A stretch of 64,000 nucleotides of DNA from contig JANJGN010000026.1 in the NCBI GenBank assembly GCA_026770705.1, positions 36,394,001-36,458,000 of the forward strand, in the 5' to 3' direction. This DNA comes from Isurus oxyrinchus (taxonomy: Eukaryota). This document shows positions 32,176 to 60,365 of the stretch, piece after piece (the stretch's first letter is position 1; each line of letters starts with the position of its first letter). A model generated the notes under the pieces. The model saw only the letters and a program-made list of their open reading frames with translations, had not been told where the DNA came from and made no database searches. The position numbers were made by a program, and so were the translations under genes.

Positions 32176-32444
32176 CGAGCGTATGGAGCAGATCATTTCC
32201 AGGGTATACCTTCCGACACAAACACTACACTGTGCTTCGGCCTACACGTAGATGAAGTCTTTAAAGTCTGATCCGAGCAAAGGCCTTCCCCGTGACTCAA
32301 TGAGTGAGATATTCCTGTAGTTGTTGCAGTCTCACCTGTTGGTTTTGTTTTCAGATAGTGCAATGATTATGATGTTCTTCATCTCCTTCAGAACGGATCT
32401 TAACTTTCAGCAGAGGAGGAGAAGGTCGTAAAGGCTGAGAAACA

Positions 32445-32790
32445 TACATAATTATATATACCAATTATTATCAATTCACGAAGGTAAATAATTATATTGA
32501 CGAATTACCATCAATTCACAAAGATAAATAATTATATTCACCAATTGGCATCAATTCACAAAGATAAATAATTATATTCACCAATTATTATCCATGCACA
32601 AAAATAAATAATTATATTCAACAACTATCATCAATTCACAAAGATAAATAGTTACATTCACCAATTATCATCAACTCACAAAGATAAATAGTTACATTCA
32701 CCAATTATCATCAACTCACAAAGATAAATAATTATATTCATCAATTATCATCCATTCACAAAAATAAATAATTGCATTAACCAATTATTT
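32445..32790. repeat. AT-rich 40-bp tandem repeat, ~8.5 copies
   Basis: TAAATAATTATATTCACCAATTATCATCAATTCACAAAGA at 40-bp period. Confidence 0.95.
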
Positions 32791-35865: not shown

Positions 35866-35952
35866 GCTCACTGGGGCCAGAATTCAACAATCCGGGAGTT
35901 GGTTTGTTCACTGAGTTCTGGACAGAACCATTTTCACCAAATGACCAGAAGG

Positions 35953-35998
35953 ATGAGGTCGGCGATTTCTCTCAGTTTGTTGCTGACTTTCTTATCCG
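35953..35998 (+). CDS. IGHV: IgH leader exon (MRSAISLSLLLTFLS-G); in-frame upstream ATG at 35941
   Basis: Hydrophobic signal peptide, phase-1 donor G|GTGAGT. Confidence 0.96.
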
Positions 35999-36126
35999 GT
36001 GAGTAGTTTTTATTGTCCAAGTCTCTCACTGTTACTGTCTCAGTGTTAGTCTCTCTCTGGAATGTTACAGAGTCAAGAATTATTTCACCAGAATTAACCC
36101 TCGGGGTTTTTGATATATTTTTACAG

Positions 36127-36431
36127 GTGTCCAGTCGGAGATTGTGTTGACTCAGCCAGAGGCAGAGACCGGGCGTCCCGGAGGCACCCTGACACTGACC
36201 TGTAAAACCAGCGGCTTCGATCTTGGCAGCTACTACATGTACTGGGTCCGACAGGTTCCTGGACAGGGGCTGGAATGGCTCCTTGAGTACTATAGTTCAT
36301 CCAACAACAACTACGCCCCAGGAATTAAGAATCGATTTACTGCGTCCAAAGACACTTCAAGGAGCATCTTCTCCTTGGACATGACGAGCCTGAAGACTGA
36401 AGACACCGCCATCTATTACTGTGCAAGAAAC
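36127..36431 (+). CDS. IGHV: IgM heavy-chain V exon (germline, unrearranged)
   Basis: TTACAG acceptor; [39 protein letters not shown], no stops. Confidence 0.98.
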
Positions 36432-36470
36432 CACAGCGAGAGGAACCAGGGCTGGACCCGAACAAAAACA
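36432..36470 (+). other. VH 23-RSS
   Basis: CACAGCG + 23 nt + ACAAAAACA. Confidence 0.97.
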
Positions 36471-36838
36471 GATCGAGAGGGATTCAACAACTTCCATCGT
36501 AACCTGACGGTCAGTACTTGTTTTAAATGTAATATTAACTGTAATGATCAGAACCAGACAACAAGCCGCTTCTGACAAAAATAAAACAGCAAATTTAACA
36601 GTAAAACATAACAAACCAATTGATATAATGGGCTGAGCTTTTGCTGTGTTTATATTTACTGTTAACAGTTTCCACAATTACAGTCCTGGATATAATGTTC
36701 ATTTTAATATGTCTGATACTTGGAGGAGGGTCTCTGTTCATTGAGTTTTGTAAATTGCTGCATGAATTCTAAAGAAGATCAGAAGTAAACGTCTATTTGA
36801 AGTGAATATTAAGAAGCAGCATTGAACAGAGTGGGTGC

Positions 36839-36918
36839 AGTTTTTGTGCGGGTGTATTTCACTGTGATACTACAGTGGGTCACAGTGCTGTGCATAGCGA
36901 CATCCTCATACAAAAACC
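36839..36918 (+). other. IGHD: D1 segment (core ATACTACAGTGGGT, 36867-36880) with 5' 12-RSS and 3' 22-RSS
   Basis: AGTTTTTGT-12-CACTGTG [D] CACAGTG-22-ACAAAAACC. Confidence 0.97.
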
Positions 36919-37211
36919 TCAGAGAAGGAGTTTGTTTAAATTCGTGATCTCTAACACAGCAGGAACGACAAAGAAAATGATAGTTAAATAACATAATGGG
37001 TCGAGGTTTGCAAAAAGGTATTCCACTTTGTTCGTAGTGACGGACATGCTAAATCTGCAGAGATTTTGAAAGTATTCCAATCACATTTATAAATATAATG
37101 ACCAGCACAGGCTGGAATATCTCACTGATTCATTCTTAAGCGAGTCGGAATCGGGTTTTTGAGAAGGCAGTGAACTTAAATCTCTATATTTTACAGTGAA
37201 CAGTCTGCCGC

Positions 37212-37280
37212 AGAATTTGACATGGTGTGTCTCACTGTGATATACTGGATGGCACAGCAGTTACTGTCAATACAAAAACA
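37212..37280 (+). other. IGHD: D2 segment (core ATATACTGGATGG, 37240-37252) with 12/12 RSS
   Basis: AGAATTTGA-12-CACTGTG [D] CACAGCA-12-ACAAAAACA. Confidence 0.95.
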
Positions 37281-37610
37281 CCTCAGCACTAATTGAGTCT
37301 GCCTGGATCAGTGCTCGCTTTTACAATCCAACTATATTTACAATGAAGTATTATTTTTGTTCAGCATTGACCAAAGCAACGTGATTTAAGATGGAAAAGT
37401 TGTGATAATTATCCATTCATCAGTTGGTGATTTCAATAACATCTTCATGTGCTACTCTGTGAATTATAAAAAATGAGGGTCATTGATGAATAGCGAAAGA
37501 TATCCACAAACGCAAATATAATTTTGTGAGGATTCATCGTGATCTTCCTTTGCATCTGACTTATGAATATTTAGAATAATGGTGGATTTCTGTATTTTTC
37601 GTGCAGGGAC

Positions 37611-37649
37611 GGTTATTGTATGTCACAGCCCAGGGAATGTAACACTGTG
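37611..37649 (-). other. JH 23-RSS
   Basis: GGTTATTGT + 23 nt + CACTGTG on the top strand. Confidence 0.96.
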
Positions 37650-37697
37650 ACGCTATGGACTACTGGGGACAAGGGACCATGGTGACGGTGACTGCAG
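37650..37697 (+). CDS. IGHJ: JH segment (AMDYWGQGTMVTVTA)
   Basis: WGxG motif, phase-1 donor G|GTAAGA. Confidence 0.98.
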
Positions 37698-40684
37698 GTA
37701 AGAACCATGCACTTATTAAAAACTGTACTATTTAAGTCTTTGCTTTACATTTTTGTCTATTTTAATAATTCACTCGTTGACTGAAATGTGGGTTTGGTGG
37801 ATTCTGTGTGCAGATTTTTTTACAATGCTTCATGCGATTCTGCTGAAATTGAGTTATATAATTCCGCTGTGTCTTGACAAAAAAGTGTTACTGAGGGATT
37901 GAGTCCCTGGTTGTTGTGATTTGGTGTTTATCTGCTGAGGATACTGTGTGACCGGGCTACTTGAAATGTCTAACGTTTGTTAAAACAGTTTGACGTTTCT
38001 GCAATGTTTAATATCGGTGACATCTAATGGCTGCGGGTTTTACCATCTGTTACACAGGGTTTAAATATGTCTGAAATCAATCCTAATTTAAACAAAATGT
38101 GCTTAAGTTTCAATGTTAATTTATTGAACATGTTCCGCCTACTCACAATGCTGGTGCCATTATTCCATATTTCTGTTTAGTTTAATTATTCATTCATTTG
38201 GTGACGATCGAGTTGTCTGGATTCGTTGTTGAGTTTTTCTTGCAATGTGACATTGAATTCTGTTGGAAGTATTTGTTCAATTGAGCTGCTTCTCCATGAA
38301 ACAGGTTTCAGCCCCTCAGTGATGTGATTCTGGTGTATTTTCTGCTGAGGAGATTGTGTGTCTGGGTGACTTTGAATTAGTAGAATTTGTGAAACGGTTT
38401 GGCGGTTCTGCATTGTTTCTGCTTTGTTTAAACTCGGTGACATTGAGCGGTTACACGTTTTGTGGTTGAATGGAAACAGTCTACGCGTTTGTATCTGCTT
38501 GAAGCGCGATTGTAGGCAGAAAACAGGTTTCAGAAATGGGGAAAAAGCGTTTAACGATGCCTTAGAACATTTTGTTTTTATTTTAAGTGATAATTGCAAA
38601 TTAAACTAAATCATGGATAATGACGCTCATTCAGAACATAACTCGGTACTGCAATCAGAAACTATATAATTAACAAGTTTTCAAATTGTAAAGTAAAATG
38701 AATATAATTCAAACAATTATAATATGGTAATATTTCTCCATATTGACGGAACAACTTTCATATTAACATAATTGCTCATTAATCGTCTTTCACAATTCTG
38801 CTGTGCGCTGCGCACTATTAAGATGATAGGAAAAGTTTTTAGGCTGGAAACATTTTGTGATTATGTATTAAAAAAATCAATAAGAATATACTGACTCTAC
38901 AGAATTGTTCAGATTCACAAGAGATTTTGAATTATTTTTTTTAGATCCCTGATAACCTTTATCTTAAAATCTTAAAACCTTATCTTAAAGACTTAAAGAG
39001 GAGTTTGACATTGCAGTTTGGCAATATGTGTATCCGTTTATTACAACCTTTCTGTGCAACCAGAGACGCATTATTCCTTCAATGTCATTGGGATTTGGAT
39101 AGCGAGATAATTGTCACTAGTTTAATCTTAAACAGTTTTTTGGGGGTAGAATTTGCTGGCAGTAAATGAATTGTTCTTACATTTTCTTGAAATGTAGGAA
39201 GGTGCAGACTGCATATGAATAGAGATTGACAAGTAAAAGCTTGAAATTCGAACAGATTAATTTAATTGCAAACATTAATATTAGTTTTGAGCTTAATAAC
39301 AATACCTCCCATAGTTGTGCTGGACACAGAATAGAATTATAGGGGAAGAACAGATTATATCTGAGATTCATGCTTAATTCTTATTAAATGTTAAATTGAA
39401 GAACAAAATCTCGAATCCTTTTGCTGGTTATATTTCAGTGGCGCAGATGATCTGAATGAATTGTTCTCATCAAGTTTTATACTGATCAATTTGGATCTTC
39501 TTTCAATGAACAACATATTTAACCATTAAATTATAGGGATTGTTATCTAGGAAGCACTTTTATTGTTAAGTAACTGCTAGGAACATTTTTTACATATAGC
39601 TTGGAATTAAGACAAGTTTGCTTTAACCAACAGATGGTGTTACAGCCCATCGACAGTTAATGTGATGTGACCCCCGGCCATATTTGAAAATATTTAAAAT
39701 ATTCCACTCATAAAGTCATCGTGTGAATTACTCGATGAGAATAGATGGAATTTATGATTTCTCAATGCGTTCAGAAACACGCATAGTTTACAATTTTGTA
39801 CGTTAAAACAGAGCAGTGGAAGTAAAAGTAAAATAGTAAATAATGATTAGATTTAAGTAAAATTGATATACTTCTCTGAATGTTACCATCTGGTAATTTC
39901 AAGTTTATTGTTCAACATTGTTTCAGTGTCAGGTTGATTTAAATAAACCCCAATTATTTCACAAAGTACCAGGGAGAAACAAGTTTTCAATTATTGAAAA
40001 CCATTTTTAATATTATAGAGTAGAAATCAGCTAACAAGAAAATGAATTGACAATAACAAGATAATTAACTTACAAGATAATATTAGTGAAAATTAATTCA
40101 ACATAAATAAACTCCAACAATTAAGTAGTCATTATAATGAATGCAAAATCTCAAAGGGTGGAGAGAATTTTTAATTGTATCCAAAATGAATTTAGAAAAG
40201 AATACTTCCTTACTCAGCTGTGCTCAGCTCGATAAGGTGTTTCGCCTTGATGATTTTCTTGATTATATTTATATCTACAATCACATCAAATCAGTGGGTA
40301 ATCGATTTTCAATATGACTATTTCCTGATTTGTTTAATTCTTACCTTGTCATTGAGTTTCTGTTACGGACATGAAATTACCCTGAATCTGTCATATTTAA
40401 TGTGCTCATTTTCAGGGTAACTTAAATCTTACATTGTTTGGAGATTTGAGGCAGACAGGGAGAATTAAATGGAGTTCAAAGGGAGTTTTAAAATGAAAAT
40501 CAGATTAATTTCAAAGAAGTTATAGAATAATTGTAGTAAATTGACCATTGATCAATTAGAATCAAACAGCTTGAATAAAATGGACAGATTGAACAGATCT
40601 ATCTGCTGGGAACTCACTTGTTGCATCATTTATGTCTGTTCTGTGCCTGTGCGCGTGGTCACTATGCTGGGACCAGGATTCTGA

Positions 40685-41140
40685 CATATTGACAGTGAAG
40701 GAACGGCGATATAATTCCAAGTCAGAATAGTGGGTGCCTTGGAGGGGAACGTACAGGTGACAGTGTTTCCAAGCACCTGCTGCCCTTGTCCTTCTAGTTA
40801 GCAGAGATTGTGGGTTTTAAGGGTGCTCCTGAAGGAGCCTTGGCGAGTTGCTGCAGTGCATCTTGTATATGGTACACACTGCTGTCACTGCGCATCGGTG
40901 GGGGAGGGAGTAAATGTTTAAGGTGTTGGATGGGGTACCAATTCTGTGGGCTGCTTTGTCCCGGATAGTATCGAGTTTCTTGGGGTTTTTTGAAGTTTCA
41001 CTCATTGAGGCAAGTGGAAACTATTCAATCCCAGTCCTGACTTGTGCCTTGTAGATGGTCAGTTGTCTTTGGGCAATAGGAGTTGAATTGCTCGCCACAG
41101 AATTCCCAGCCTCTGACCGGCTCTTGCAGCCACAGCATTT
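40685..41140 (-). mobile_element. LINE 3' fragment (the family whose tail is shared with the SINE)
   Basis: KKLDTIRDKAAHRIG..VCTIYKMHCSNSPRLL; overlaps in sequence with 50280-50485. Confidence 0.8.
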
Positions 41141-41904
41141 ATATCAAAACTGGATTGAACCCTCTCGTGGGCATATTTGATGGAACAATGTAGAGAGAGT
41201 TTTATTTTATGTCAAACCAGTGCTGTACCTGACCCGGAGTGTTTGACAGTTCAGTGGAGAATTGGCTTTCTGTTGAATCCCATCCTTGCAGCTGATGACA
41301 GGAGTGTAGCGGAGGAGGAGTGGGGGCTTTAATCCATGTCTTAACTTGTCCTGTTCCTGACTTGAGAGCCTTTTCCCTGCAGAGGTCAAACAAACTGAAT
41401 CAGCATCGAACTAACTGGCTGTGAGTCCTAGACCAGATCTGTGAAAATAAATAGTTCCATTGCTCGGTTGAAATGACGCACATTAATTGTTTTTAACAAT
41501 ATTTCTGGAGAGAACATGTATGCATTTTAAATGAATTAATTATGTTTAAGCATTTTGAGTATCAGAAAATCATTGAATGTGAGTGACCTGAACTTGAGCA
41601 CAATTTCAGAACAAACAGAATCAGGGAGTAACAGTGAGGCTCCAGAGAGCAGCACCTGTTCTGATCTGATCAGAGGCTGCAAGTTATTTAAATGATTGAA
41701 ATGGACAATGACCATCCTCCCGCTCCAAATAACCAGTCGTGGGGAATTTGGGGAAAAGAAGCCGCCATCAAAGACTGAGTTATTGAATTGCCGCCTGCAG
41801 GGGGAGGAATGAATGACAGAAATAAGAGCATGAGGAGGATGTTCGGCCCTTCGATCCTGCCCTCCATTCAGTCAGATCATGGTTCATCTACCTCGACACT
41901 CAGT

Positions 41905-42385
41905 CTCTTTACCACACACCCTCACTCGCTCACTCTCTCTGTCACACACGCTCTCTCTCTCACACACACGTTCACTCTCTCTCTCTCTCTCACGCATTTT
42001 CTCTGACAGACACACACTGTCTCTTTCTCTCTCTGTCTCACACACACACACAAACATACTCTCACATTCTCTCTTTCACACACACAAACTCTCTTTAACA
42101 CGCCCACACTCTGTCTCACACATTGTCTCTCTCTTTCACACACACTCTCAAACATACTATCTCAACTACACACACTCTCACGCACGTGCACACTGTCTCT
42201 CCAACACACACATGCACTATTTCTCACACATGCACTCTCACACACTCATTCTCTCTCACACACACACACACACTTTCTGTCTCTGTCTCTCTCTCTTTCC
42301 CTCTCAAAAACACACATACACTTGCATGCACTCTCTCTCTCTCTCTCTTTCTCACGCACACACACACATTCTCACATACATATGT
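41905..42385. repeat. Mixed (CT)n/(CA)n low-complexity tract
   Basis: Direct reading. Confidence 0.93.
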
Positions 42386-42959
42386 GGGCTGAAAATACTA
42401 ATTTCAGAATGAAAATCCGTTAAACTGCAGGCATGTTCATTGTTCCATTTCTGAAGTCCTTTTGTGTAAAATGCAATTACACAGGTGACATCACTATATA
42501 TGTGGAGAATTTCCAAGTGTTGAACTAAACACAAAGAAACAAGAAAATGGGAGGGATGTGATGGAGACCACGGCCGCCTTGATCCCCAATACTGGTGCAC
42601 ACTTGGTGCAAGATACCTGCACGGCCCATCCTGGTTTTGCTGTAACCTTCCCCTCCAGCCCCTCAGTCTGCCTATTCGCACACTGACACGGGTTTCTTAA
42701 AGAAAGGCATCAGCATTAAAGCAGCTGGCCAGTGCTCTACACTGCTGCCTGACTTTACACAGCCGGTGTTACTGAAAGCTGATCAATCTGGAGAATCGGG
42801 ACAGGGTCGATGGAGAGGAAGAGGAGGAGGTGGAGCTGGTGGAGCTGAATGGAGGAGGCCCCAGCTCGGCAACAGGCAATGGAAAGCTGAGCCAGAGCAG
42901 AAAATCATCTGGAGAAACATCACCTTGATGAGCCTGCAGCACCTGGGCACCGTCACTAC

Positions 42960-43770
42960 CCACAATCATCACCCTCATTCTCTCACTCATCCTCACTACC
43001 CATAATCACTCATCCTCACTCAATCTCACTCACTCACCCTCACTCACTCGCCATCACTCATCCTCACTCCCTCACCCACCCTCACTCACTCACCCTCGCT
43101 CACTCGCCCTCACTCCCTCTATCACTCATCCGCCCTCCCTCACCCACCCATGCTCACTCACCCTCACTCACTCACACTCACTCACCCATCACTCACGCAC
43201 CCTCACTCACTCTCTCTCACTCACCCTCACTCACCCATTTTCATTCTCACTCAATTACTCACCCTAACTCACTCACTCTCACTCACCCTCACTCACCTTT
43301 CCCTACCGAGCCTCATTCTCACTCAATTACCCACCCTAACTCACTCACTCTCACTCACCCACAGTCACTCACCCAGCCTCATTCACAGTCATTCACCCAC
43401 CCTCACTTATCCACCCTTACTCATCCACCCTCACTCATCCTTACTCAAACTCACTCATCCACCCATCCTTATTCACCTACCTGCACTCAGTCAATAACTC
43501 ATCCTCCCCACCCTCACACACTCAATCACCCTCACTTACATATCCACCCTCACACACCCAGCAACTCTCACTCACCCACTCATCCACCCTCAGTCAATCA
43601 CCCACCCTCACTCACTCATCCATTCTCACTCACCCACATTCAGGCACCCACCCACGCTCACTCATCACTCACCCACGCACCCTCACTCACTCAGCCACCT
43701 GCCCTCGCTCTGTCACTCAGCCACCCTCACTTTGTCAACCTTGCACAGGCTCACTCACTCGATCACTTTT
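42960..43770. repeat. C-rich (TCAC)n/CACCCTCACT tandem repeat (G-rich on bottom strand)
   Basis: Direct reading; almost no G on the top strand. Confidence 0.93.
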
Positions 43771-43889
43771 CCTAAATCGGCGTGTGGGAGGGCGGGAACT
43801 GCGGGAACGAGAGACCTGGAAGCGAGGCCTGAGGCCTAGCAGTGCCAAAAAGTGGAGGATGGCCGAAGGGAGCGATGAGTGTCGGTCGA

Positions 43890-45500
43890 AAGGGCAGAGA
43901 GGCGAGGAGAAAGTGCAGAGAGCCTGGGGGAAAAGGCAGAGAGCCGAGGAGGTTGGGGTGGAAGGGCAAAGAGCCGGGGGGTTTGGGGGGAAGGGAAGAG
44001 AGTCGGGGAAAAGGGCAGGGATCCAGCAAAAAGTGCATAGAGATTGGGCAAGGGTCAGCGAGCCCGGGAACGGTCAGCGATCCAGTGGAAAAGGTCAGAG
44101 AGCCGAGCGAAAGCGCAGAGACCCATGGAGTAAGTGCAGAGAGCTGGGGGAGAAAGCACAGAGAGGCGGGGGGTGGGGTGAAGTGCAGAGAGGCAGGAGG
44201 GGGAAAGGGCAAAGAGGCGGCGGGGGAAAGGGAAACGGCAGAGAGGTGGGGTGGAGGGTTGAGAGGCGGGGGGGCAGTGTGGAAAGGGCAATAAAGCGGG
44301 GGGCAAAGGGCAGAGAGGCGGGAGGGGGAAAGGGCAGAGAGGCAGGAGGGAAAAAGGACAGAGAGGCAGGAAGGAGAAAGGGCAGAGAGGCAGGAGGGGG
44401 AAAGGGCAGAGAGGCAGGAGGGGGAAAGGGCAGAGAGGCTGGAGGGAAAAAGGACAGAGAGGAGAGGAGGAAAGGGCAGGGAGGCCGGAGGAGGAAAGGG
44501 CAGAGAGGCCGGAGGGAAAAAGGGCAGAGAGGCGGGAGGGGAAAAGGGCAGAGAGGTGGGAGGGGAAATGGGCAGAGAGGAGAGGAGGAAAGGGCAGAGA
44601 GGCAGGAGGGGAAATGGGCAGAGAGGAGAGGAGGAAAGGGTAGAGAGGCGGGAGGGGGCAAAGGGCAGAGAGGTGGGAGGGTGAAGGGCAGGGAGGCGGG
44701 AGGGGGAAAGGGCAGAGAGGCCAGAGGGAAAAAGGGCAGAGAGGCAGAAGGGTGAAAGGGCAGAGAGGCTGGCGAGAAAGGGAAGAGAGGCGAGGGGTAA
44801 AGGGCAATGAGGCAGGAGGGGCAAAGGGCAGAGAGGCGGGTGGGGCAAAGGGCAGAGAGGCGGGTGAGGGGAAAGGGCAGAGAGGCGGGAGGGCAAAGGG
44901 TAGAAGGGCCAGAGGGGGAACGGGCAGAGAGACGGGAGGGGGAAAGGGCAGAGAGACGGGAGGGGGAAAGGGCAGAGAGACAGGAAGGGGAAAGGGCAGA
45001 GAGACGAGAGGGGGAAAGGGCAGAGAGACGGGAGGGGGAAAGAGCAGAGAGGTGGGAGGAGGAAAGGGCAGAGAGGCGGAGGGAGGAAAGGGCAGAGAGG
45101 CAGGAGGGGGAAAGGGCAGAGAGGCGGGAGGGGGCAAGTGCAGAGAGGAGGGTGGGGGTAAAGGGCAGAGAGGTGGAGGGAGGAAAGGGCGGAGAGGCAG
45201 GAGGGGGCAAGTGCAGAGAGGCGGGAGGGGGAAAGGGCAGAGAGGCAGAGGGAGGAAAGGGCAGAGAGGCAGGAGGGGGGAAGTGCAGACAGGAGGGTGG
45301 GGGTAAAGGGCAGAGAGGCTGCAAGGGAAAGGGCAGAGAGGCAGGAGCAGGCAAGAGCAGAGAGGTGGGGGGGAAGGGCATAGAGGCGGAGGGAGGAAAG
45401 GGCAAAGAGGCGGAGGGAAAGGGCAGCGAAGCGGGCAGGGGGGAAGGGCTGAGAGGTGGGGGAATGGGGAAGGGCAGCAAGGTGGGCAAAAGTGCAGAGA
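43890..45500 (+). repeat. G-rich polypurine 24-bp tandem repeat (AAAGGGCAGAGAGGCRGGAGGGGG), roughly 55-65 copies
   Basis: 24-bp period, e.g. 44401-44424; extreme G/A skew on the sense strand of IgH. Confidence 0.96.
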
Positions 45501-45974
45501 GCCGGAATACAGTGGGGACATCCGGGCGAAAGCATTTGTGAGCCGAGGCTCCAGGCACCCTGGGCCCCATTCTCTCTCACTCTCTCTCTCTCCCTCATTG
45601 CATCTCCTCCTCCTGAAATCCTTTCCTTTCCTGGGGAAAGGTGATAAGTGCCTAGGAGAGAAAGGAGACAATGTCTCAGTGCGCTCCCCCCCCCTCACCC
45701 CGGCCCCACCGGCTTCCTACACCTTCCTCCAGTGGGTGTTCACTGCCCCTCCAATCACAACCTGTTTGTCTCCCACTTTTCCTGCTGATAGGCCCACTAG
45801 TCAGGCTATCAGCAGCTAACGGGGTAGGGGGTGCGCCTGAGATTGGGGGAGCATCTCCTTGCAGATATCTTCAACTCCACTTACCTGCCTTACTAGCATT
45901 TTGAACAACGGCTCCGGGGGCCAGACAGAGGGGCTTCGGGGGCCACAATCCAGTGAAGGGACATGGATTGGACA

Positions 45975-47580
45975 AGCCCATAATAAAGGAAAATAAGGAA
46001 ATGGGCAGAGAAGTTGGCCAAATACTTTGGCCTTAACGAGATGGTTACTAAAATGGCAGAGGCATTGGTTTTAATTTTCCAAACTTCCCGAGATTCTGAA
46101 ACAGTCTAATCAGGTTGGAAAATAGAGAATGAGGCTTTCTCTTAAATAAAGGAGGGAAAGGGAAAGCAAGAAACTACAGGCCAGTTAGCTTAACATCTGT
46201 CAGAGCGAAAATGTTTTAATCTTTTCTTAAAGAGTATATCATGAGTCACCAAGAAAATCCAAATGCAAATATGGAGATCCATCATAGTTTTGTGAAAGGG
46301 AAATCAATCACGTTTGGCTGATTTATTTGAGGCCTTTGAAGTAAGAAGGAACATGAATAAAGGAGAACCTGTGGGTGTGCTATACTTGGACTTCAAGAAG
46401 GCATTTGACAAAGTGGCACGTCAAGGTTATTACACAAAATAGTGGTGTCAGCAGTAACATTTCAGCATGGATAGAAGTTTGGTTAGCTAACAGGAAACAG
46501 AGAGCAGGGATAAATTGGTTATTTTAGATTGGCAAGATGTGACAAGTGGAGTGCCACAGGGATCAATGCTGCGGCCTCAACTATTTACAATTTATAACAA
46601 TGACTTGAATTAAAGGACTGAATGAATTTGCTAAATTTGCTGATAACACAAAATAGATAGTAAAGTAAATGGTGAAGAGAGGTTAAAGATCAGCAAAGGG
46701 ATATCGATAGGTTAAGTGAGTGGGCAAAGAAAATGACAGATGGAGTATAATCTGGGAAAATATAAACTTGTCCACTTTGGCAGGAAGAATACAAAAGCAG
46801 CGTATTATTGAAAGGGAGAGAGATGGCAGAACCCTGAGGTACAAAGGGATGTGGATCCCTTGGTGTATGAATCACAAAAAGTTATAATGCAGGAACAGCA
46901 AGTGATGAGGAAGGCAAAGGGAATGTTGGCATTTATCACAAGGGGAACAGAATATAATGGAAGGATATTTTGCTACAGTTTAACGGGGTGGCGATGAGAC
47001 CTCGTCTGAATTACTGTGTACAGATTTGGTCTCGTTTAAGAAAGGATATAAAAGCATTAGAAGCTGTTCAGAGAATGTTCATTCAAATGATACTGGGAGG
47101 TGTCGTCGGTTATCTTCTGAGGAAAGTTTGGATAGGCTGGGCCTGTATCCATCGGAGTTTAGAAGAATAAGAGCTCATTTTATTCAAACATATAATATCC
47201 TGAGGGGAATTAACAGGGTGGATGCTGAAAGGATGTTTCCCCTTGTGAGAGAGACTAACGATAGGGAACACGGTTTAAAAATAAGAGGTCTCCCATTTCA
47301 GACAGAAATGAGGGGATTTTATTTTTTCTTTCAATGACTCGTGAAACTTTGGAACTCTCTTCCCCAGAGAGCGATGGAGGAGGAGTCATTAATATTTCAA
47401 GGCAGAGGTAGAGAGATTCTTCATTGACAAGGGAGTCAAAGGTTAGCGGAGATTAGGCGGGAATGTGGAGTTCACGCCACAATCGGATCAGCTATGATCG
47501 GTAGTGAATGGTGGAGGAGGCCCCAGAGGCCGAATGGCCTACTCCTGCTACTGATCCGCACGTTCACATGTACATACGAT
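45975..47580 (+). mobile_element. CR1-type LINE fragment, decayed
   Basis: Remnants of NYRPVSLTS, YLDFKKAFDKV, SGVPQGSML, FADNTK, RPRLNYCVQIW and CR1 3' UTR. Confidence 0.9.
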
Positions 47581-48126
47581 TGGAAAATATCGTACTAACA
47601 GTCACTGGTATTCAGTTTAGGGTTCTATGGTCATTATATAGGTACCATTACAAAGGTACTTTCGAAGTGTTATTGCTGTTCTTTGTTTTGGGGGGGATGT
47701 GGAGAGGGGAGGGGCATCAGGAAATTTGAACAGAGCCCATTTTCAAAGCTGCAATGATATAAATGATGAGACAAATTCTCTATCACCACGTGCTGTTGAT
47801 TGAGAAATAAATGGTGCCAAAATAATGGGGAAGATGCTCTGCTCTTCCATTTTAATCCACTGAAAGGTACGTCATTCAGATGACATCAAAATGTTCTCTT
47901 TTAGTAATGGGATAGAGGCGGAAAAAGAGGTGTGGGTTTCTAAAGAGGGAACCGACAAGTGAGGGTCACCAAATGATGGAAATAATAAATGATCAAATGT
48001 GGATGTGGGCTTTAGTTGGAATATATTTGGATATGTTTATAGTTCTAGTCTAATGTCGAGTTGTTTGGTTACTTAATGATCACAAATCACAGAGTCTAAC
48101 TTGTTCGATCGGCCATTCTTTCCTAG

Positions 48127-48426
48127 CGACACCGTCTTCGCCCACTCTCTACAGCCTGGTCTCCTCCTGTCAGCAACACAACCCCGATGGCTCCGTCACC
48201 TACGGCTGTTTGGCGATGGACTACTCCCCAGAAATCACCAGCCTGACCTGGAAGAAAGATGGGCAGCAGATTACCACTGGATTTAAGACTTACCCGTCAG
48301 TGAGAAACCAGAAGGGAACTTTCACCCTGAGCAGCCAGTTAACCATCACAGAGTCAGATGGAGAATGCAGCAAAATCAAGTGTGAGGTTCGATACAGCGG
48401 CTCAGACAAGAGCATTGAAATGCACT
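48127..48426 (+). CDS. IGHM: IgM constant exon Cmu1
   Basis: TCCTAG acceptor; (A)[40 protein letters not shown]; donor T|GTAAGT. Confidence 0.97.
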
Positions 48427-48640
48427 GTAAGTATTGGGGAACCTGTGAGAAACAGAAAGACTGTGATTGACCTGTATAGGGCTTTGGCTGTAACGCATTT
48501 ATAGTGCTCTGCATAGTTCTGATCCCTGGAAATTCCAAGTTCGTGTCCATCGACCGCAAAGAGCCTGTTAAAATATAAGAACTTATTGTATCTGTTATCA
48601 ATTTCTTCTGCAAGAAATGGCTAACCTTTGTTTTTTGAAG

Positions 48641-48955
48641 GTCCTCGTCCTGACTTACCTCCAACTGTTCTCCTCACCGTGAGTTCCAGAGATGAAATCA
48701 CAACCAAAAAATTTGCAATCGCCGTCTGTTCAATCATCGATTTCCGTCCGAAGCCATTCACCGTGAAGTGGCTGAAAAATGGACAATCCATAAATTCAGG
48801 AATTGTCACCTCTCCCGCCTTTGGAATGAACGGGAACTTCTCGGCGACCAGTCGGCTGCAAGTCTCCGCTGGGGAATGGTTCAGCGACGCAGTCTATACC
48901 TGTCAGGTCACTCACCAAGGGGTCACCCAAAGTCGAAACGCCACCAAGTGTGAGG
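48641..48955 (+). CDS. IGHM: IgM constant exon Cmu2
   Basis: [31 protein letters not shown]; donor G|GTAAGA. Confidence 0.97.
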
Positions 48956-49289
48956 GTAAGAAATACAAACCGTGGAAGCAATAGATCATTCTCCACTCCG
49001 GTGTTAATCAAATCAGGAATTTATTGGAGTTAGTAGAAAGCACGAAACAACATCTAATTTACTATCATATAGTTGGTGTTTCATTCCGATGTAAGGGCTG
49101 CATTCGGATTATTCACCATTCAGGATTTGATCACATCACGTCTCTGCACTGACGTCATAGAGTATGTGAGGTGGACTTGATATCAGCTTTACCTTGAGTC
49201 AGCTGATCATATTTGGAGAGGCAGAAGGTATCTGGAACCCTTCACTGGTAACAGCTTCGAGACAGAGTGTTGGAAAGTGCACCCACCCT

Positions 49290-49505
49290 TTTTATAAAAC
49301 ATATTTCAGTCCTGTATTCCAGGGCCCAGGAATGATACATTTGTATTGGGACTGGGGCAACGCAGATTTATGAGAATGTTACCGGGGCTGAACGACTTAA
49401 ATTATGAGAACAATTTACACAGACCAAGCTGGTTTTCCATTGTGTAAAGAAGATTAAAAACGATAGTTAGAGGTTGATATGTCCCAGGTGATTTATTCTC
49501 CTTCA
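49290..49505 (+). mobile_element. Short decayed CR1 fragment
   Basis: QRRFMRMLPGL..LNYE-type remnant. Confidence 0.55.
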
Positions 49506-49579
49506 GGGAGAGAAGACTGAACACTGCTGTCCTGCTTCTGAAGGTGAAACTTTGGTTGATTTTCATTTCTGTCTCACAG

Positions 49580-49891
49580 GCGATCACCAATGCCTCAACG
49601 ATCCCACAATTACTCTATTGCCACCTCCAATAGAACAAGTCTTACTGGAGGCGACCGTGACCTTAACCTGCATCGTTTCTAATGCTCCTTTTGGAGTCCT
49701 CGTGTCCTGGACACAAGAGAAGAAGCCTTTGAAATCAGAGATCGCCGTCCAACCGGGAGAGGATCCCGACAGCGTGGTCAGCAACGTAAACATCTCGACA
49801 CAAGCCTGGCTGAGTGGGGCTGAGTTCTACTGCGTGGTGAGCCATCAGGATCTGCCGACTCCTTTAAGAAGTTCCATCCACAAGGAACCAG
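49580..49891 (+). CDS. IGHM: IgM constant exon Cmu3
   Basis: TCACAG acceptor; [32 protein letters not shown]; donor G|GTGAGC. Confidence 0.97.
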
Positions 49892-50279
49892 GTGAGCGGT
49901 GAGATTGAAGCAATAAGTTGTTCAATGTGTCTATTTCCAGTGTAAATGTAAGGATCAATATTTACTATTCAGTGTATTCATGGTCTACTCTGATTAGCAA
50001 TTTCGCCAACGAAACGCCCTGGGCCTGTGGACTTTCAGGAGGAAATTGATAAGTAGATGAATGAACAATGAATTGAAGGCTGTGCCATTGGGTTTAGATG
50101 AAGCAAGATGGGAGGAGCCTGGTGCGAAGCTGAAACACCAACATGGACCAGTTGGGCAGAATGGCCTGTTTCTATGCTGTAAACTTTGAGAAACTTTCTC
50201 GTCCAACCCTATAAGTTCTCAAGGAAAAGGATTGTGCCACCTCTGCTCCGAGCTGGAAAGCCGGACAGATCCCAAACTA

Positions 50280-50485
50280 TTTTATTTATTAATTCATGGG
50301 ATGTGGGCGTCGCTGGCTGGGCCAGAGTTATTGCCCATCCCTAATTGCCCTTGACAAGGTGTTGGTGAGCTGCCTTCTTGAACTGCTGCAGTCCATGTGG
50401 TGTAGATACACCCACAGTGCTGTTAGGAAGGGAGTTCCAGAATTTTGATTCAGCTATAGTGAAGGATCGGTGATATATTTCCAAG
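50280..50485 (-). mobile_element. LINE 3' terminus
   Basis: Reverse complement of AAGGGCAATTAGGGATGGGCAATAA..GCCAGCGACGCCCACATCCCATGAAT. Confidence 0.85.
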
Positions 50486-50605
50486 AAGTGGATAATGAAA
50501 AACCTTAATATTCATCACAAAACACGTTACTCTCACATCTAACCAGTGGTTTCATTGTCTATGAATGTATCCAGTTTATTAACATTTATTGTACATTTTC
50601 TGCAG

Positions 50606-50997
50606 TTAAAGACCCGCGGGAACCGTCCGTGTCTGTCCTCCTGCCCTCGGCAGAACATGTCTCCGCTCAGGGATTCGTCTCCCTCAGCTGCTTAGTGACA
50701 GGTTTCTCCCCGCGAGAGATTTTCGTCAAGTGGACTGTCAATGACAAGCCGGTGAATCCCGGAAACTACAAGAACACCGAGGTAGTGGCGGAGAACGGCA
50801 ATCGCTCCTTCTTCATGTACAGCCTGTTATCCATTGCAGCGGAGGAGTGGGCCAGCGGCGCTTCTTACTCCTGTGTGGTGGGACATGAAGCGATCCCCTT
50901 GAAGATCATCAACAGAACTGTTGATAAATCCAGCGGTAAACCGAGTTTTGTGAACATTTCCCTTGCACTGATGGACACCGTTAATTCATGTCAATGA
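50606..50997 (+). CDS. IGHM: IgM constant exon Cmu4 plus secretory tailpiece; internal donor for the membrane form after 50935
   Basis: [33 protein letters not shown]|[20 protein letters not shown]; penultimate Cys, NIS sequon; G|GTAAAC at 50935/50936. Confidence 0.98.
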
Positions 50998-51024
50998 GAA
51001 TCTCTCGGTTACATTTCAAACTTC

Positions 51025-51040
51025 AATAAAAAATAATAAA
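51025..51040 (+). terminator. Secretory-form polyadenylation signals
   Basis: AATAAA at 51025 and 51035, followed by a GT/T-rich tract. Confidence 0.85.
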
Positions 51041-51439
51041 GTCCTTTTCTCCAATCGTGATTTAAATACACAGTCGTTTAAGTAATGTTGTTTTCCAATT
51101 TTGCTAATTTTAGACGTGTTTTGTTAAAATCGGATACTCACAGGGCTCAGACCCAAGTCTTGTACATCCAGTGCTCCCAGCTCAGATACACCCTGGGTTA
51201 GAGACAGAGTAAAGCTCATTCATTACAGGATTCTGCAAAATAGCTTCACCAGCTCTCCTCCAGCTGAGGAGAAATCTGACAATTTCTCATTTCCAATAAA
51301 CAAACACAGCACATTTAGATCTCGGTGTTCCTGCTTCTCTTGTCTTCCATCCCTTTAAAGTGGATGTCAGCTTTAAGCTTCTGCACCACACCCACGGGGA
51401 ACTGAAGTGAGGGTCACGCAGAAATATGTCCCAACAATC

Positions 51440-51960
51440 CCCCATCAGAGAGAGGGGGAAGGGAAATTGTTACCCCATTGCACCTCCACCTCCCCAACAG
51501 AGAGAGGGGGAGCGGAAATTGCTAACCCACTGTACCCCGACTTCTCCAACAGAGAAAGGGGAGGGGAAATTGTTAACCCAATGTACCCCCACTTCCCCAG
51601 AGAGAGTGGAAGGGGACATTGTTAAACCACTGCACCTTCACTTCCACAACAGCAGGTGGTGGTGGGGGGGAATTGTTTAACCACTGTACCCCCACTTTCC
51701 CAACAGAGAGAGGGGAAGGCAAACTGGTAAACCACTGTACCTCCACTTACCTGAGATAGAAAACTGAAAGGAAAATTTTAAGCCAATTTTATCTCCACTT
51801 GCTAAACAAAAAGACAAGGAAGGCCATTGGTTAACCCGGTGTGTTTCCACCTTCTCAGCAGAGAGAACCGAAAGGGAAATTGCTTAGACAACCAGACAGA
51901 GCAAAACTATTAACTCACTGGACCCTCAGTCCCCTAGTAGAGAATCTGGAAGGGAATGGG
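51440..51960. repeat. ~52-bp tandem repeat, ~10 progressively decayed copies
   Basis: ACAGAGAGAGGGGRAGGGAAATTGTTAACCCACTGTACCCCCACTTCCCCA-like units. Confidence 0.88.
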
Positions 51961-52359
51961 TCTCTACTATAAGGACTCAGTTAACAACAGTCGAAGTCAG
52001 CTTCTAGCTTACTGGCCACAGATTTTAAACTCCCATCATGCTTAGGATGTTGTAAAAACGTCTACTTGTGCAACATAACTTGAAGATGTTTTAACACTCT
52101 TGCCCTGTTAAGCTTATGCTAAGATTGATTTCCCATCATCCAAATCTAAACTGGTGACTGAATCCTCCCTGGGTTGTTCAAGGTTCTGTCCCTGAATTTT
52201 TATGAGGCACATGGTTGATTCTTTGCATTCGTTCATCTGATATCACCTTGCATCTCACAGAAAACATGTTTATACACAGAACTTTGAAAATATTCACCGG
52301 ATTTTTCACCGTCAAGGTCAGACTCGATCATTGGTATCTGGTGAACTTTGAAAAAATAG

Positions 52360-53470
52360 TAAAAATACACACAGCTGACACAAATTGACAAACAAAAAAC
52401 ACGTCTACACACACACATAGGCACAGACACACTGACACAAACGCACACAGGTACAAGCAGACACATGTACACCAACACATGTGGAACCACACAAAGACAG
52501 ACAGACACACATAGACAAATATACACACACGTGCACACACACGCAGACACACACGCACACAATCACAAACACATGGACACAGATGCACAAACATACACAG
52601 ACACACACGTACACACATAAACAAATACACACGCACAATCACACACATTCATAAACACACACACAATCACACACATACAGAAATACACACACTGACACAC
52701 TCGCTCACACACATATACACAATCACAAACACACACAAACAGATAAAACCAGACAAGCAGACTCATACAAGGATACAAAGCACAAATGTAACTTTTAGCA
52801 TATGCATTATCACACGTTCACAATGAAAGAAATACAGACAGAAAGACACACACGATCGTACACATTAAAACAATGCATGGACATACATTAACACATGCAC
52901 ACACATGAGCAGACAACACCCAGATACAAAAACACAGAGAAACCGACTAACACATTCACAGACACCCATGTGGACACAAACATGAACATACTCATACACA
53001 CTAGAACACAAAAAACACATGTTGGTACATATGAAAACATAAACACGCATTGATACATAGTTCTAAATATCGATCAACACACAAATGCACACATTAAAAA
53101 CCCTATTTCTCTCTCGCTGTGTCATACACACAGACGCTGTGACACAGACATTAATATGCTGACACACAGTGGAACACATTAACACTCATATTAGCAGGCA
53201 GGAACTCGTAAACACACATTAACTCAGATAGTAATAAGTCAACATAGACAACAATACACAAACACGCACAATAACACACTCATACATACACATCAGCAGA
53301 AAAACCAAATATACATACAGACGCAGACACAAAAATACACAAATCAGCACTCATTAGCACATGAACACACATATTAACACACATGCACACCTATGGACAC
53401 ACAAACAACCAGTAATGCAAAGTGCGAGATACTCATGCAGATACACACAAAAGCTAAAGCACAACACAGA
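52360..53470. repeat. Long degenerate (CA)-rich tract
   Basis: Direct reading. Confidence 0.9.
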
Positions 53471-54006
53471 GGCCAGGCTATTGAAGAAAGTATAATTCAA
53501 ATGTACTTTTCTAACGGGCATATCCTCCAGCAATTGTCTCTATTACATAATAACCCGATAAACACACTGAAACAATGCTCTTACTGAGAAACTGATTTAA
53601 ATTAATGATGCACCAAATATTCCCATCACAAATAGACAAACAAGATGGGAACTCATATCCGAGATTTTAAAAAGCAACGTCCACAGTTTCCAAATAAGTA
53701 GCTCAGTGAATCTCTCCCGATACCCATCATAATATTCTCCAATAATAGATCATACAAAATTGTTCGAAAATAACCTGATACTGGAGAAAATTTGCCATAT
53801 TTTCTGACATGGACTGTACAAAGATTGTAAAGGGAGAACAGCTGTGGAGATAGTTACAGAGATGGGTTACTGAGTGTCACTTAATAGTACATATACATTG
53901 AACATTCAATACATTAATAACTTATGAAAGAGTAAAGGAAATATTTTTCAAATGATATCCTAGATTAATAAACAATCTAATTATATTTCCTCATATATCC
54001 CCGTAG

Positions 54007-54134
54007 ATTCCACAGACCGCATTTGGATTGAAGACTCTGAGGATGATAACGGCAACATCTGGACAACCGCTTCCACATTCATCATCCTGTTCTTCCTGAG
54101 CATTTTCTACAGCACTGCCGTCACTCTGGCAAAG
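54007..54134 (+). CDS. IGHM: IgM transmembrane exon TM1
   Basis: (D)[46 protein letters not shown] motif; CCGTAG acceptor, AAG|GTGAGA donor. Confidence 0.97.
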
Positions 54135-58469: not shown

Positions 58470-59080
58470 ATGTGAACATACGAATTAGGAGCAGGACTGG
58501 GCCACTCGGCCCTTCAAGCCTGTTCCACCATTTTATAAGATCATGGCTAACCTTTCAGCTCCTTGTTATATCTACCTATCTCTGCCTTAAAAGGATTCAA
58601 AGACTCTGCTTCCACTGCCTTTTGAAGGAGAGAGTTACAAATACTCACGATGCTCTGAGAGAAAAAGAATTCTCTCATCTCTGTCTTAAATGAGCGAACT
58701 CCTATTTTTAAACAGTGACACCTAGTTCCAGATTCTCCCACAAGAGGAAAGATCCTCTTCACACCCACCCTGTCAAAACTCCTCAGGATCTGAAAGATTC
58801 CGATCAAGTCGCCTCTTAGCTTTCTAAACTCCAGCAGATACAGGCCTAGCTTGTCCACCCTTTCCTCATAAGACAGCCCGCAGATCTGTGATATTAGTCC
58901 AGTAAGCCTTCCCTGAACGACTTCTCATGCATTTACATCTTTCCTTAAATAAGGAGGCCAACACTCTCCACAGTACTCCAGATATGGTCACACCGGTGTC
59001 CTGTACAACTGAACTATAACCTCCTTACTTCAATTCCCCTCACAGTGAATGATAACGTTCAATCCTAATTACTTGTTGTG
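58470..59080 (-). mobile_element. CR1-type LINE 3' fragment
   Basis: KLGLYLLEFRKLRGDLI..HCLKI..FFSQ. Confidence 0.9.
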
Positions 59081-59987: not shown

Positions 59988-60365
59988 GTGATTGAGGTGT
60001 ATAAAATTATATGGGGTATAGGTAGGGTAGACAGGAAGGAACTTTTCCCCTTAGTGGAGGGATCAATAACCAGGGGGCATAGATTTAAGATAAGGGGTGT
60101 AAGGTTTAGAGGGGATGCGAGGAAGAATGTTTTCACCCAGAGGGTCGTGGGAATCTGGAACTCACTGTCTGAAAGGGTGGTAGAGGCAGAAACCCTCATA
60201 ACGTTAAAGAAGTATTTGGATGTACACTTGCGATGCCATGGTATAGGAGGCAATGGGCCTAGTGCTGGAAAATGGGTTTAGAATAGTTAGGCACTTGTTT
60301 GATGGGTGCAGACTCGATGGGCCGAAGGGCCTTTTTCTGTGCTATGGGACTCTATGACTCTATAA
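59988..60365 (+). mobile_element. CR1-type LINE 3' end, same subfamily as 372-740
   Basis: Near-identical peptide (RKELFPLVE.SIT.GHRFK..QRVVGIWNSL.ERVVEAETLIT); (CTCTATGA)n tail. Confidence 0.92.

What the first reader, a model, noticed from the sequence alone, without database searches (positions are those of the whole stretch)
43890..45500. Switch-region-like G-rich tandem repeat in the JH-Cmu intron of a shark IgM minilocus
Seen: ~1.6 kb of a 24-bp repeat (AAAGGGCAGAGAGGCRGGAGGGGG), almost purely purine and G-rich on the non-template strand. It ends ~2.6 kb before Cmu1 (~1 kb without the intervening CR1). Each unit has clustered G runs and one or two GGCA (RGYW) motifs. Nothing comparable occurs elsewhere in the window. 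Established: mammalian S regions sit at this position, are G-rich on the non-template strand and form R-loops/G4 that expose AID targets. Sharks are generally described as lacking classical S regions, although AID-linked switching between clusters has been reported. Inference: this may be a primordial or convergent S-like element promoting recombination between miniloci. Caveat: palindromic AGCT/WGCW hotspots are nearly absent, so the hotspot cytosines are mostly on the template strand.
Basis: partly seen in the sequence, partly recalled or inferred. Interest (0 to 1): 0.8.

Follow-up and report, generated by a model that had tools for sequence, protein, structure and literature searches.

The report
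G-rich minisatellite in shark IgM intron
A 1.6-kb stretch of about 60 G-rich 24-letter repeats sits in the long intron before the constant exons of a shark IgM antibody gene; it has the position, strand bias and R-loop-prone composition of a mammalian antibody switch region but lacks that region's enzyme target motifs and nearby promoter, so it is most likely an inherited repeat array whose role in shark antibody switching is still untested.

Summary
A 24-bp unit (consensus AAAGGGCAGAGAGGCGGGAGGGGG) repeats about 56 times at 44132-45462, with degenerate copies from 43888. It lies on the coding strand of a complete IgM minilocus, inside the 10,429-bp JH-Cmu1 intron and 2,627 bp before Cmu1.

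The core is 56% G and 88% purine and meets R-loop sequence criteria almost uniquely in the 64-kb window. It fails other defining switch-region features:
- AGCT (0.8/kb) and WGCW (8.3/kb) are below background.
- Only 11-13% of its cytosines are WRC hot spots, against 25% window-wide.
- No promoter motifs, CpG island or intronic exon lie upstream.
- It begins 6.2 kb past JH.
- An RNA run shows only the JH-to-Cmu1 splice.

Laid contigs show it is not a genome-wide repeat. Its flank is multi-copy, and a sister organism carries it with unit-number differences. This scan already found the same kind of array in at least ten other IgM clusters of this genome (unchecked notes; two follow-ups called them ordinary minisatellites).

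Best reading (0.6): a G-rich minisatellite inherited with cluster duplication. An S-like role in inter-cluster switching remains possible (about 0.17) and testable.

The parts
43888..44131 (+). Degenerate 5' part of the G-rich array. Units are 20-60 bp of the type AAAGKGCAGAGAGCC...; 45% G, 76% purine.
   Evidence: TRF rows for 43888-44113; unit parsing; composition.
44132..45462 (+). Core G-rich minisatellite: 24-bp unit AAAGGGCAGAGAGGCGGGAGGGGG, about 56 copies, 56% G, 88% purine. It shows local variant blocks and 48/72-bp higher-order periodicity. The last degenerate units run to about 45500.
42974..43731 (+). C-rich array (CTCACTCACCCACC)n of opposite polarity directly upstream (GC skew -0.9). 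It is a generic high-copy low-complexity repeat and not part of the G array.
   Evidence: summed contig depth of 81,000-154,000 at 43101-43300, against 8-600 on the G array.
37698..48126 (+). JH-Cmu1 intron (10,429 bp) that contains the array. GT donor at 37698, AG acceptor at 48125-48126.
   Evidence: An RNA contig joins the JH end (ATGGTGACGGTGACTGC) to Cmu1 at 48125/48127 (table 7).
35941..35998 (+). Leader exon of the IgM minilocus.
36127..36431 (+). VH exon (V-set domain), followed by a 23-bp-spacer RSS at 36432-36470.
   Evidence: Pfam PF07686, E = 2.4e-19.
36867..36880 (+). D1 segment flanked by heptamers at 36860-36866 and 36881-36887.
37240..37252 (+). D2 segment flanked by heptamers at 37233-37239 and 37253-37259.
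37650..37697 (+). JH segment (AMDYWGQGTMVTVTA), with its heptamer at 37643-37649.
46000..47560 (+). Decayed LINE fragment (RT motifs plus a CR1-type C-terminal tail) between the array and Cmu1. It is highly repeated genome-wide.
   Evidence: summed depth of 12,000-310,000.
48127..48426 (+). Cmu1 exon.
   Evidence: Pfam C1-set, E = 1.9e-10.
48641..48955 (+). Cmu2 exon.
   Evidence: Pfam C1-set, E = 8.7e-17.
49580..49891 (+). Cmu3 exon.
   Evidence: Pfam C1-set, E = 1.5e-8.
50606..50997 (+). Cmu4 exon with secretory tail.
   Evidence: Pfam C1-set, E = 3.1e-21. 82% identity to Chiloscyllium punctatum and 90% to a sandbar shark Cmu4 fragment.
54007..54134 (+). TM1 membrane exon (...[27 protein letters not shown]).

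Best explanation
This is a G-rich minisatellite. It arose by slippage and unequal exchange in the JH-Cmu intron of an ancestral IgM cluster of this shark lineage, and it has been copied along with every later cluster duplication.

It is transcribed only as part of the mu pre-mRNA and removed with the intron. Because the G-rich strand is the non-template strand, it is predicted to be prone to co-transcriptional R-loops and G4 structures. It has no dedicated switch-region machinery: no AID hot-spot enrichment and no promoter or I exon of its own.

Shown here: the array, its position and strand, its composition, its minisatellite-type internal structure, its low genome-wide copy number, multi-copy flanks, and its presence with unit-number differences in a sister organism. 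Inferred: its origin in an ancestral cluster, and the absence of a selected function.
For: - **Minisatellite anatomy.** 32 of 59 unit spacings are exactly 24 bp. Variants sit in local blocks: GAGAC in five adjacent units at 44919-45038, a 22-bp variant at 44449/44567/44613, and a roughly 72-bp higher-order repeat at 45135-45304. Neighbouring units are slightly more alike than distant ones (0.869 against 0.833). The 5' edge is degenerate and less purine-rich.
- **Unit-number variation.** Joints inside the array (44691>45182, 45180>45439, 44481>44965) appear in contigs of organism B.
- **Not built as an AID target.** AGCT is 0.8/kb against 3.1 and WGCW 8.3/kb against 18.2. WRC summed over both strands is 75/kb against 105/kb background. 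60% of template-strand C are SYC cold spots, and 90 of 119 non-template C are GGC.
- **G4 propensity is compositional.** Mononucleotide shuffles fold into G4 equally well (-32 +/- 11 kcal/mol against -20 to -49), and only 2 canonical short-loop G4 motifs occur.
- **No promoter or I exon seen.** There is no octamer/TATA pair, NF-kB site or CpG island upstream (CpG o/e 0.3-0.5). RNA contigs cover only Cmu1 and the LINE, with JH spliced directly to Cmu1.
- **Distance.** The array lies 6.2 kb from JH and about 8 kb from the V leader.
- **Earlier follow-ups.** Two on paralogous arrays reached the same verdict (not independent evidence).
Against: - The array appears in every IgM cluster so far noted (at least ten others, 1.3-2.5 kb each, per unchecked notes). 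It is not a dispersed repeat. A purely neutral 1.6-kb R-loop-prone array in a very highly transcribed gene might be expected to be lost in some copies.
- G density (56%) and G clustering exceed the values shown experimentally to drive R-loops and CSR in mouse (46% against 29%, PMC4245955).
- Nurse sharks do switch between clusters through an unknown target (reviews PMC4279169 and PMC8201067).
- AID can be recruited by G4 RNA from spliced S-introns rather than by hot spots (PMC9921937).
Confidence: 0.6

Rival explanations
1. S-region analogue. Transcription through the array in activated B cells forms R-loops and G4 structures, and the spliced intron RNA folds into G4. These recruit AID by structure or make the DNA break-prone. 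The array would then serve as the preferred donor and acceptor zone for recombination between IgM (and IgW) clusters.
For: - It has the correct position and strand, with 56% G.
- 24 of the 26 RIZ+REZ R-loop-forming hits on the window's + strand lie in the array.
- 1055 of 1561 G4Hunter windows scoring at least 1.2 lie in the array.
- It is specific to IgM introns and is not genome-wide.
- Template-strand WRC (63/kb) and RGYW (58.6/kb) are at or above background.
- Cluster switching exists in nurse shark.
- Lariat-derived G4 RNA guides AID in mouse.
Against: - AGCT and WGCW are depleted, and total WRC is below background.
- No upstream promoter or I exon was seen.
- It lies beyond the 4-5-kb promoter-linked CSR domain of mouse, and greater promoter distance lowers R-loops and CSR.
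- Paralogue conservation is explained by duplication.
- Reviews describe shark switching as concomitant with SHM and as lacking S regions.
Confidence: 0.17
2. Cis-acting RNA or transcription element. The dense intronic G-runs act as binding sites for hnRNP F/H-type factors or as a Pol II pause zone. This would aid processing of the 10-kb intron or tune mu expression, without any role in recombination.
For: - There are about 40-50 runs of three or more G per 500 bp, on the sense strand only.
- The RNA is otherwise unstructured (-1.4 to -7.4 kcal/mol per 120-140 nt without G4).
- G-rich homopurine tracts on the non-template strand are known to block or slow transcription (PMC5499740, abstract seen).
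- The array is retained in many clusters.
Against: - There is no direct evidence.
- The array is 2.6 kb from the acceptor and 6.2 kb from the donor, which is far for splice-site-proximal G-run enhancers (my own knowledge).
- The edges decay freely.
Confidence: 0.1
3. Part of a transposable element or dispersed satellite that happened to land in the intron.
For: The array is flanked by repeats: a C-rich microsatellite upstream and a LINE fragment downstream.
Against: - Summed contig depth on the array (8-600) is at or below that of its own flanks (about 400) and 100-1000 times below the LINE and the C-rich repeat.
- The unit occurs nowhere else in the 64 kb.
- The LINE is separated from the array by 0.5 kb of low-copy sequence.
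Confidence: 0.03

Closest known systems
Mammalian (G-rich) immunoglobulin switch regions such as S-mu, S-gamma and S-alpha
   Same: Both are intronic and sit upstream of the first constant exon. Both are tandem repeats on a kilobase scale. Both are strongly G-rich with G clusters on the non-template strand, and both are predicted R-loop and G4 formers.
   Different: The shark array lacks the dense AGCT/WGCW palindromic AID hot spots: 0.8 and 8.3/kb here, against 4 AGCT per 80-bp repeat in functional synthetic S regions (PMC4245955). No I promoter or I exon lies a few hundred bp upstream. It sits 6-8 kb from the only known promoter. It is short (1.6 kb), and no junction data exist.
Xenopus S-mu (AT-rich, AGCT-rich switch region)
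   Same: It holds the same intronic position, and it is the earliest accepted S region in phylogeny (PMC10450919, PMC8201067).
   Different: The Xenopus region is AT-rich and works through AGCT motifs. The shark array is 65% G+C and AGCT-poor, which is the opposite solution.
G-rich hypervariable minisatellites of vertebrates (Jeffreys-type, core GGGCAGGAXG; recalled from memory, a lead only)
   Same: Both have a 10-60-bp G-rich unit with strand asymmetry, unit-number variation between copies, local variant blocks and degenerate edges. There are 14 one-mismatch matches to the core motif in the array, against 5 on the + strand of the rest of the window.
   Different: There is no exact core match. 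This array is fixed at one intronic position of a multigene family rather than being a single polymorphic locus.
Shark inter-cluster isotype switching (Zhu et al. 2012, as described in reviews)
   Same: It involves the same gene system, and the J-C intron is where exchange must occur.
   Different: The reviews say sharks lack S regions and that switching accompanies SHM. The primary paper was not held, so I could not check whether junctions avoid or hit such repeats. That work was done in nurse shark, not this species.

Membership tests
Mammalian-type Ig switch region | Lies in the intron between the J (or I) exon and the first CH exon, on the transcribed gene strand | tested here: met
   The array at 43888-45500 lies inside the JH-Cmu1 intron 37698-48126, on the + (coding) strand. 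The splice is confirmed by an RNA contig.
Mammalian-type Ig switch region | Kilobase-scale tandem repeats | tested here: met
   A 24-bp unit in about 56 copies plus degenerate units, 1.6 kb in total. This is the low end of the 1-12-kb range.
Mammalian-type Ig switch region | High G density (about 46%) and G clusters on the non-template strand (RIZ/REZ), giving R-loops | tested here: met
   56% G; 32-51 runs of three or more G per 500 bp; 24 of 26 RIZ+REZ hits of the window's + strand lie in the array; mean G4Hunter score 1.36. The thresholds come from PMC4245955. Actual R-loop formation is not testable here.
Mammalian-type Ig switch region | Dense AID hot spots, especially palindromic AGCT/WGCW | tested here: not met
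   AGCT is 0.8/kb (window 3.1) and WGCW 8.3/kb (window 18.2). WRC makes up 13% of top-strand C and 11% of bottom-strand C, against 25% window-wide. 60% of bottom-strand C are SYC cold spots.
Mammalian-type Ig switch region | Own promoter and I exon a few hundred bp upstream, giving spliced germline transcripts | tested here: inconclusive
   There is no octamer/TATA pair, NF-kB site or CpG island in 40000-43900. The one likely RNA run (98 Mb, contigs only) has zero depth over 43501-45900 and shows only the JH-Cmu1 joint. Sensitivity is low.
Mammalian-type Ig switch region | Recombination junctions and AID-dependent mutations map to it in B cells | not testable with these tools
   This needs long-read DNA from shark B cells. 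Logan contigs cannot show rare somatic joints.
Xenopus-type Ig switch region | AT-rich repeats carrying a high density of AGCT | tested here: not met
   The array is 65% G+C and contains one AGCT in 1.33 kb.
G-rich minisatellite | Tandem 10-60-bp units with strand-asymmetric G content | tested here: met
G-rich minisatellite | Evolution by unequal exchange: local variant blocks, higher-order periods, degenerate edges, unit-number differences between copies | tested here: met
   Variant blocks and 48/72-bp periods; identity falls with distance; internal joints in other copies.
Dispersed satellite / TE-borne repeat | High copy number genome-wide, in both orientations | tested here: not met
   Summed contig depth is 8-600 on the array, against 12,000-310,000 on the LINE and 81,000-154,000 on the C-rich repeat. 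No other copy occurs in the 64 kb. Caveat: tandem arrays assemble poorly in short-read contigs.

The most novel reading that the evidence does not exclude
G-rich, R-loop-forming switch-like elements are not an amniote invention. In this shark lineage every IgM cluster would carry one in its J-Cmu intron. It would work through structure (R-loop, G4 DNA and G4 intron RNA that binds AID) rather than through AGCT hot spots. It would be the preferred site of the cluster-to-cluster 'isotype switching' described in sharks, as either a primordial or a convergent S region.
Probability: 0.15. Interest if true: 0.8.

Novelty: new member of a known kind. Interest (0 to 1): 0.42.

Why it matters
Textbooks and reviews state that cartilaginous fish lack switch regions and that G-rich, R-loop-type S regions appeared late, because Xenopus S-mu is AT-rich. 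Sharks nevertheless exchange VDJ regions between clusters by an unknown targeting mechanism.

This array gives a concrete, cheap-to-test candidate target. It is IgM-intron-specific, strongly G-skewed and R-loop-prone, and it sits at the S position in what appears to be every IgM cluster of a shark. If junctions or R-loops map to it, the origin of S-region logic moves back to the base of jawed vertebrates, or is shown to be convergent. If they do not, it is a clean natural example that G-richness and position alone do not make a switch region.

Tried and rejected
- **The look-up of encoding contigs was closed.** I wanted it to fetch the 115-kb Chiloscyllium punctatum contig that carries a Cmu4-like gene (P0008) and a Logan contig (P0002), to look at J-C introns in other species.
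- **Metagenome collection.** An exact 39-mer spanning two units gave 0 hits. The Cmu4 exon as a protein gave no confirmed relative. No shark DNA is reachable that way.
- **Primary papers not held.** Zhu 2012 (DOI and PMC3360817), Zhang 2013 (PMC3839419), Zhu 2011 (PMC3190574), Quinlan 2017 (PMC5615186) and Kokubu 1988 (PMC454470). I therefore could not check whether nurse or horn shark introns carry such repeats, where junctions fall, or what shark AID prefers. Full-text searches found no paper describing a G-rich array in a shark J-C intron.
- **Canonical G4 motif (loops up to 7 nt).** Only 2 occur in the array, because the loops are 9-13 nt. G4 folding is no better than in shuffles. I rejected 'designed G4 array'.
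- **AGCT mini-patch at 42723-42885.** Six AGCT in 200 bp is not significant; shuffles reach this in 6% of trials. I rejected it as an S-like core.
- **Long ORFs across the array (up to 608 aa on the - strand).** These are low-complexity artefacts, not genes.
- **Rfam over 35-58 kb.** No family matched.
- **Exon-by-exon rule.** Full-length IgM chains were therefore outside the length range of the word search.

Full report
**Observation.** The repeat is real and sits where stated. Tandem Repeats Finder reports a 24-bp period with 55.8 copies at 44132-45462. Rows at 48 and 72 bp score higher (1354 and 1363), and degenerate 19-29-bp copies run from 43888. None of 100 dinucleotide-preserving shuffles gave a match. 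The core is 56% G, 9% C, 3% T and 88% purine; the degenerate 5' part is 76% purine. GC skew is +0.62 to +0.72.

**Context.** The window holds a complete, unrearranged IgM minilocus on the + strand:
- leader 35941-35998
- VH 36127-36431 (Pfam V-set, E = 2.4e-19), followed by a 23-bp-spacer RSS
- D1 36867-36880
- D2 37240-37252
- JH 37650-37697
- Cmu1 48127-48426
- Cmu2 48641-48955
- Cmu3 49580-49891
- Cmu4 with secretory tail 50606-50997
- TM1 54007-54134

The JH-Cmu1 intron is 10,429 bp. An RNA contig carrying the end of JH joined to Cmu1 confirms the splice (table 7). The array starts 6.2 kb after JH and ends 2,627 bp before Cmu1. About 1.55 kb of that gap is a decayed LINE with RT motifs and a CR1-type tail.

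Cmu4 is 82% identical to Chiloscyllium punctatum and 90% identical to a sandbar shark fragment. An earlier follow-up of this scan calls the genome a catshark; I did not test that. The cluster lies about 15 kb from NAR-TCR/TCR-delta elements, which fits the published IgH-TCR alpha/delta linkage in elasmobranchs (PMC12227049).

**What is S-like.** G density (56%) exceeds the 46% that supports R-loops and CSR in engineered mouse S regions, where 29% does not (PMC4245955). Runs of three or more G number 32-51 per 500 bp, against 17 or fewer elsewhere. By QmRLFS-type rules, 24 of the 26 initiation-plus-elongation hits on the window's + strand lie in the array. Mean G4Hunter score is 1.36, and 1055 of the window's 1561 positions scoring at least 1.2 lie in the array.

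**What is not S-like.**
- AGCT is 0.8/kb (window 3.1) and WGCW is 8.3/kb (window 18.2). Functional synthetic S repeats carry 4 AGCT per 80 bp.
- On the strand that an R-loop would displace there are 119 C. Ninety are GGC and only 16 are WRC.
- On the template strand, 84 of 740 C are WRC and 442 are SYC cold spots.
- Summed over both strands, WRC is 75/kb, against 105/kb in the window.
- The only enrichment is RGYW (58.6/kb), which is the GGCA present once or twice per unit.
- Canonical short-loop G4 motifs number only two, because the loops are 9-13 nt. With G4 folding enabled the RNA forms mostly two-layer quadruplexes, but composition-matched shuffles do equally well. G4 propensity is therefore a by-product of composition.
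- Upstream of the array I found no octamer/TATA pair, NF-kB site or CpG island (CpG o/e 0.3-0.5).
- The mouse CSR-accessible domain reaches 4-5 kb from the promoter (PMC2212040), and added promoter distance lowers R-loops and CSR. Here the only known promoter is about 8 kb away in germline configuration, or roughly 6.8 kb after VDJ joining.

**Internal structure.** The array looks like an ordinary minisatellite evolving by unequal exchange:
- The first 13 positions of the unit are 88-100% conserved; the 3' half is 47-97% conserved.
- Variants sit in local blocks: GAGAC in five adjacent units at 44919-45038, a 22-bp variant recurring at 44449/44567/44613, and a roughly 72-bp higher-order repeat at 45135-45304.
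- Neighbouring units are slightly more alike than distant ones (0.869 against 0.833).
- The 5' edge is degenerate and richer in pyrimidines.

**Reads.** Two coded organisms hold the stretch: A (0.5 of the sampled words, probably the source species) and B (about 0.32 in ten runs from five studies, roughly 3-4% divergence). All runs laid were Logan contigs, so depths are summed word depths and are not copy numbers. Four results stand:
- Depth on the array (8-600) is no higher than on its own flanks (about 400). It is 100-1000 times lower than on the LINE (up to 310,000) and on the C-rich array at 43101-43300 (81,000-154,000). The G array is therefore not a dispersed high-copy repeat, whereas its C-rich neighbour is.
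- Up to 8-13 distinct contigs cover single positions just 5' of the array (43808, 43848), so that junction exists in many paralogous copies.
- Organism B has contigs over 43828-44213, 44385-44536, 44693-44852 and 45182-45564 at about 95-98% identity. Its internal joints (44691>45182, 45180>45439, 44481>44965) indicate different unit numbers.
- The probable RNA run has no contig over 43501-45900 and no intron-to-Cmu1 joint other than JH-Cmu1. This is weak evidence, because the run holds only 98 Mb.

**Earlier findings of this scan.** The same kind of array was already noted in at least ten other IgM clusters of this genome, on the same piece and on others, with lengths of 1.3-2.5 kb. One is also described as 2.6 kb upstream of CH1. 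Two were followed up and judged ordinary or inherited minisatellites. These are unchecked AI notes. My multi-copy-flank result is consistent with them, but I could not read those loci. Among the notes returned, none places such an array outside an IgM intron.

**Interpretation.** However, conservation of position and orientation among paralogues follows from duplication and carries little weight. Every mechanistic hallmark I could test beyond composition is absent or unseen: hot spots, promoter or I exon, and distance from the promoter.

My odds are:
- 0.60: inherited G-rich minisatellite without dedicated function
- 0.17: structure-driven S-like or break-prone zone used in inter-cluster switching
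- 0.10: RNA-processing or transcription-pausing element
- 0.03: TE or satellite origin
- 0.10: other explanations

**Limits.**
- The metagenome collection holds no shark DNA.
- The primary shark papers (Zhu 2012, Zhang 2013, Zhu 2011, Kokubu 1988) and the AID biochemistry paper (Quinlan 2017) were not held. Prior description of such repeats in other sharks, and the location of published junctions, remain unchecked.
- Accessible reviews state that sharks lack S regions (PMC4279169 and PMC8201067). Six full-text searches found no description of this array.

Noticed in passing
window 42974-43731 (also 41900-42380): C-rich arrays (CTCACTCACCCACC)n and CT/CA-rich tracts lie directly upstream of the G array, so GC skew flips from -0.9 to +0.7 within 200 bp. 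Laid contigs show this C-rich repeat is extremely abundant genome-wide (summed depth 81,000-154,000), unlike the G array.
   Followed up: partly
window 42723-42885: A small patch holds 6 AGCT (GAGCT-type) motifs in 200 bp, about 1 kb upstream of the G array. It ties with a patch at about 51211 (just 3' of Cmu4) as the densest in the window. It is not significant, since block shuffles reach 6 in 6% of trials. Contigs from both organisms show a 34-bp tandem duplication here (joint 42844>42811).
   Followed up: yes
window 45642-46176: Contigs from organisms A and B join 45641 to 46177/46180 with 10-13 other letters between. Other copies of this intron therefore lack this 535-bp segment between the array and the LINE.
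   Followed up: no
window 14227-19979, 22923-24337; reverse-oriented copies at 1625-1897 and 25887-26205; also 12676-12815 and 28621-28768: A large 27/54/108-bp AT-rich satellite (unit TGCAGTGATTACTGATACAGGGTCTAGATTAATATAAACTGAGACAGGGTCTAG) fills more than 7 kb upstream of the IgM cluster and occurs in both orientations.
   Followed up: no
window 51440-51748: A 51-bp tandem repeat in 6 copies (CCCCAACAGAGAGAGGGGGAGGGGAAATTGTTAACCCACTGTACCCCCACTT) lies 0.45 kb downstream of the Cmu4 stop, between the secretory and membrane exons.
   Followed up: no
window 35941-54134 and beyond the window end: This complete IgM minilocus lies about 15-17 kb from NAR-TCR/TCR-delta V elements noted by the scan. 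That matches the published close linkage of IgH clusters to TCR alpha/delta in elasmobranchs (PMC12227049).
   Followed up: partly
window 36432-36438 and 37253-37259: The VH RSS heptamer is CACAGCG and the 3' heptamer of D2 is CACAGCA. Each differs from the CACAGTG consensus, whereas D1 and JH carry canonical heptamers.
   Followed up: no
window 58547-58858 (-), 59949-60281 (+), 47026-47337 (+): Three ORF fragments encode the conserved C-terminal tail of CR1-type LINE ORF2. Pfam has no model matching them.
   Followed up: no
window 32440-32788: A 40-bp AT-rich tandem repeat in 8.7 copies at 86% identity lies 3 kb upstream of the VH leader.
   Followed up: no
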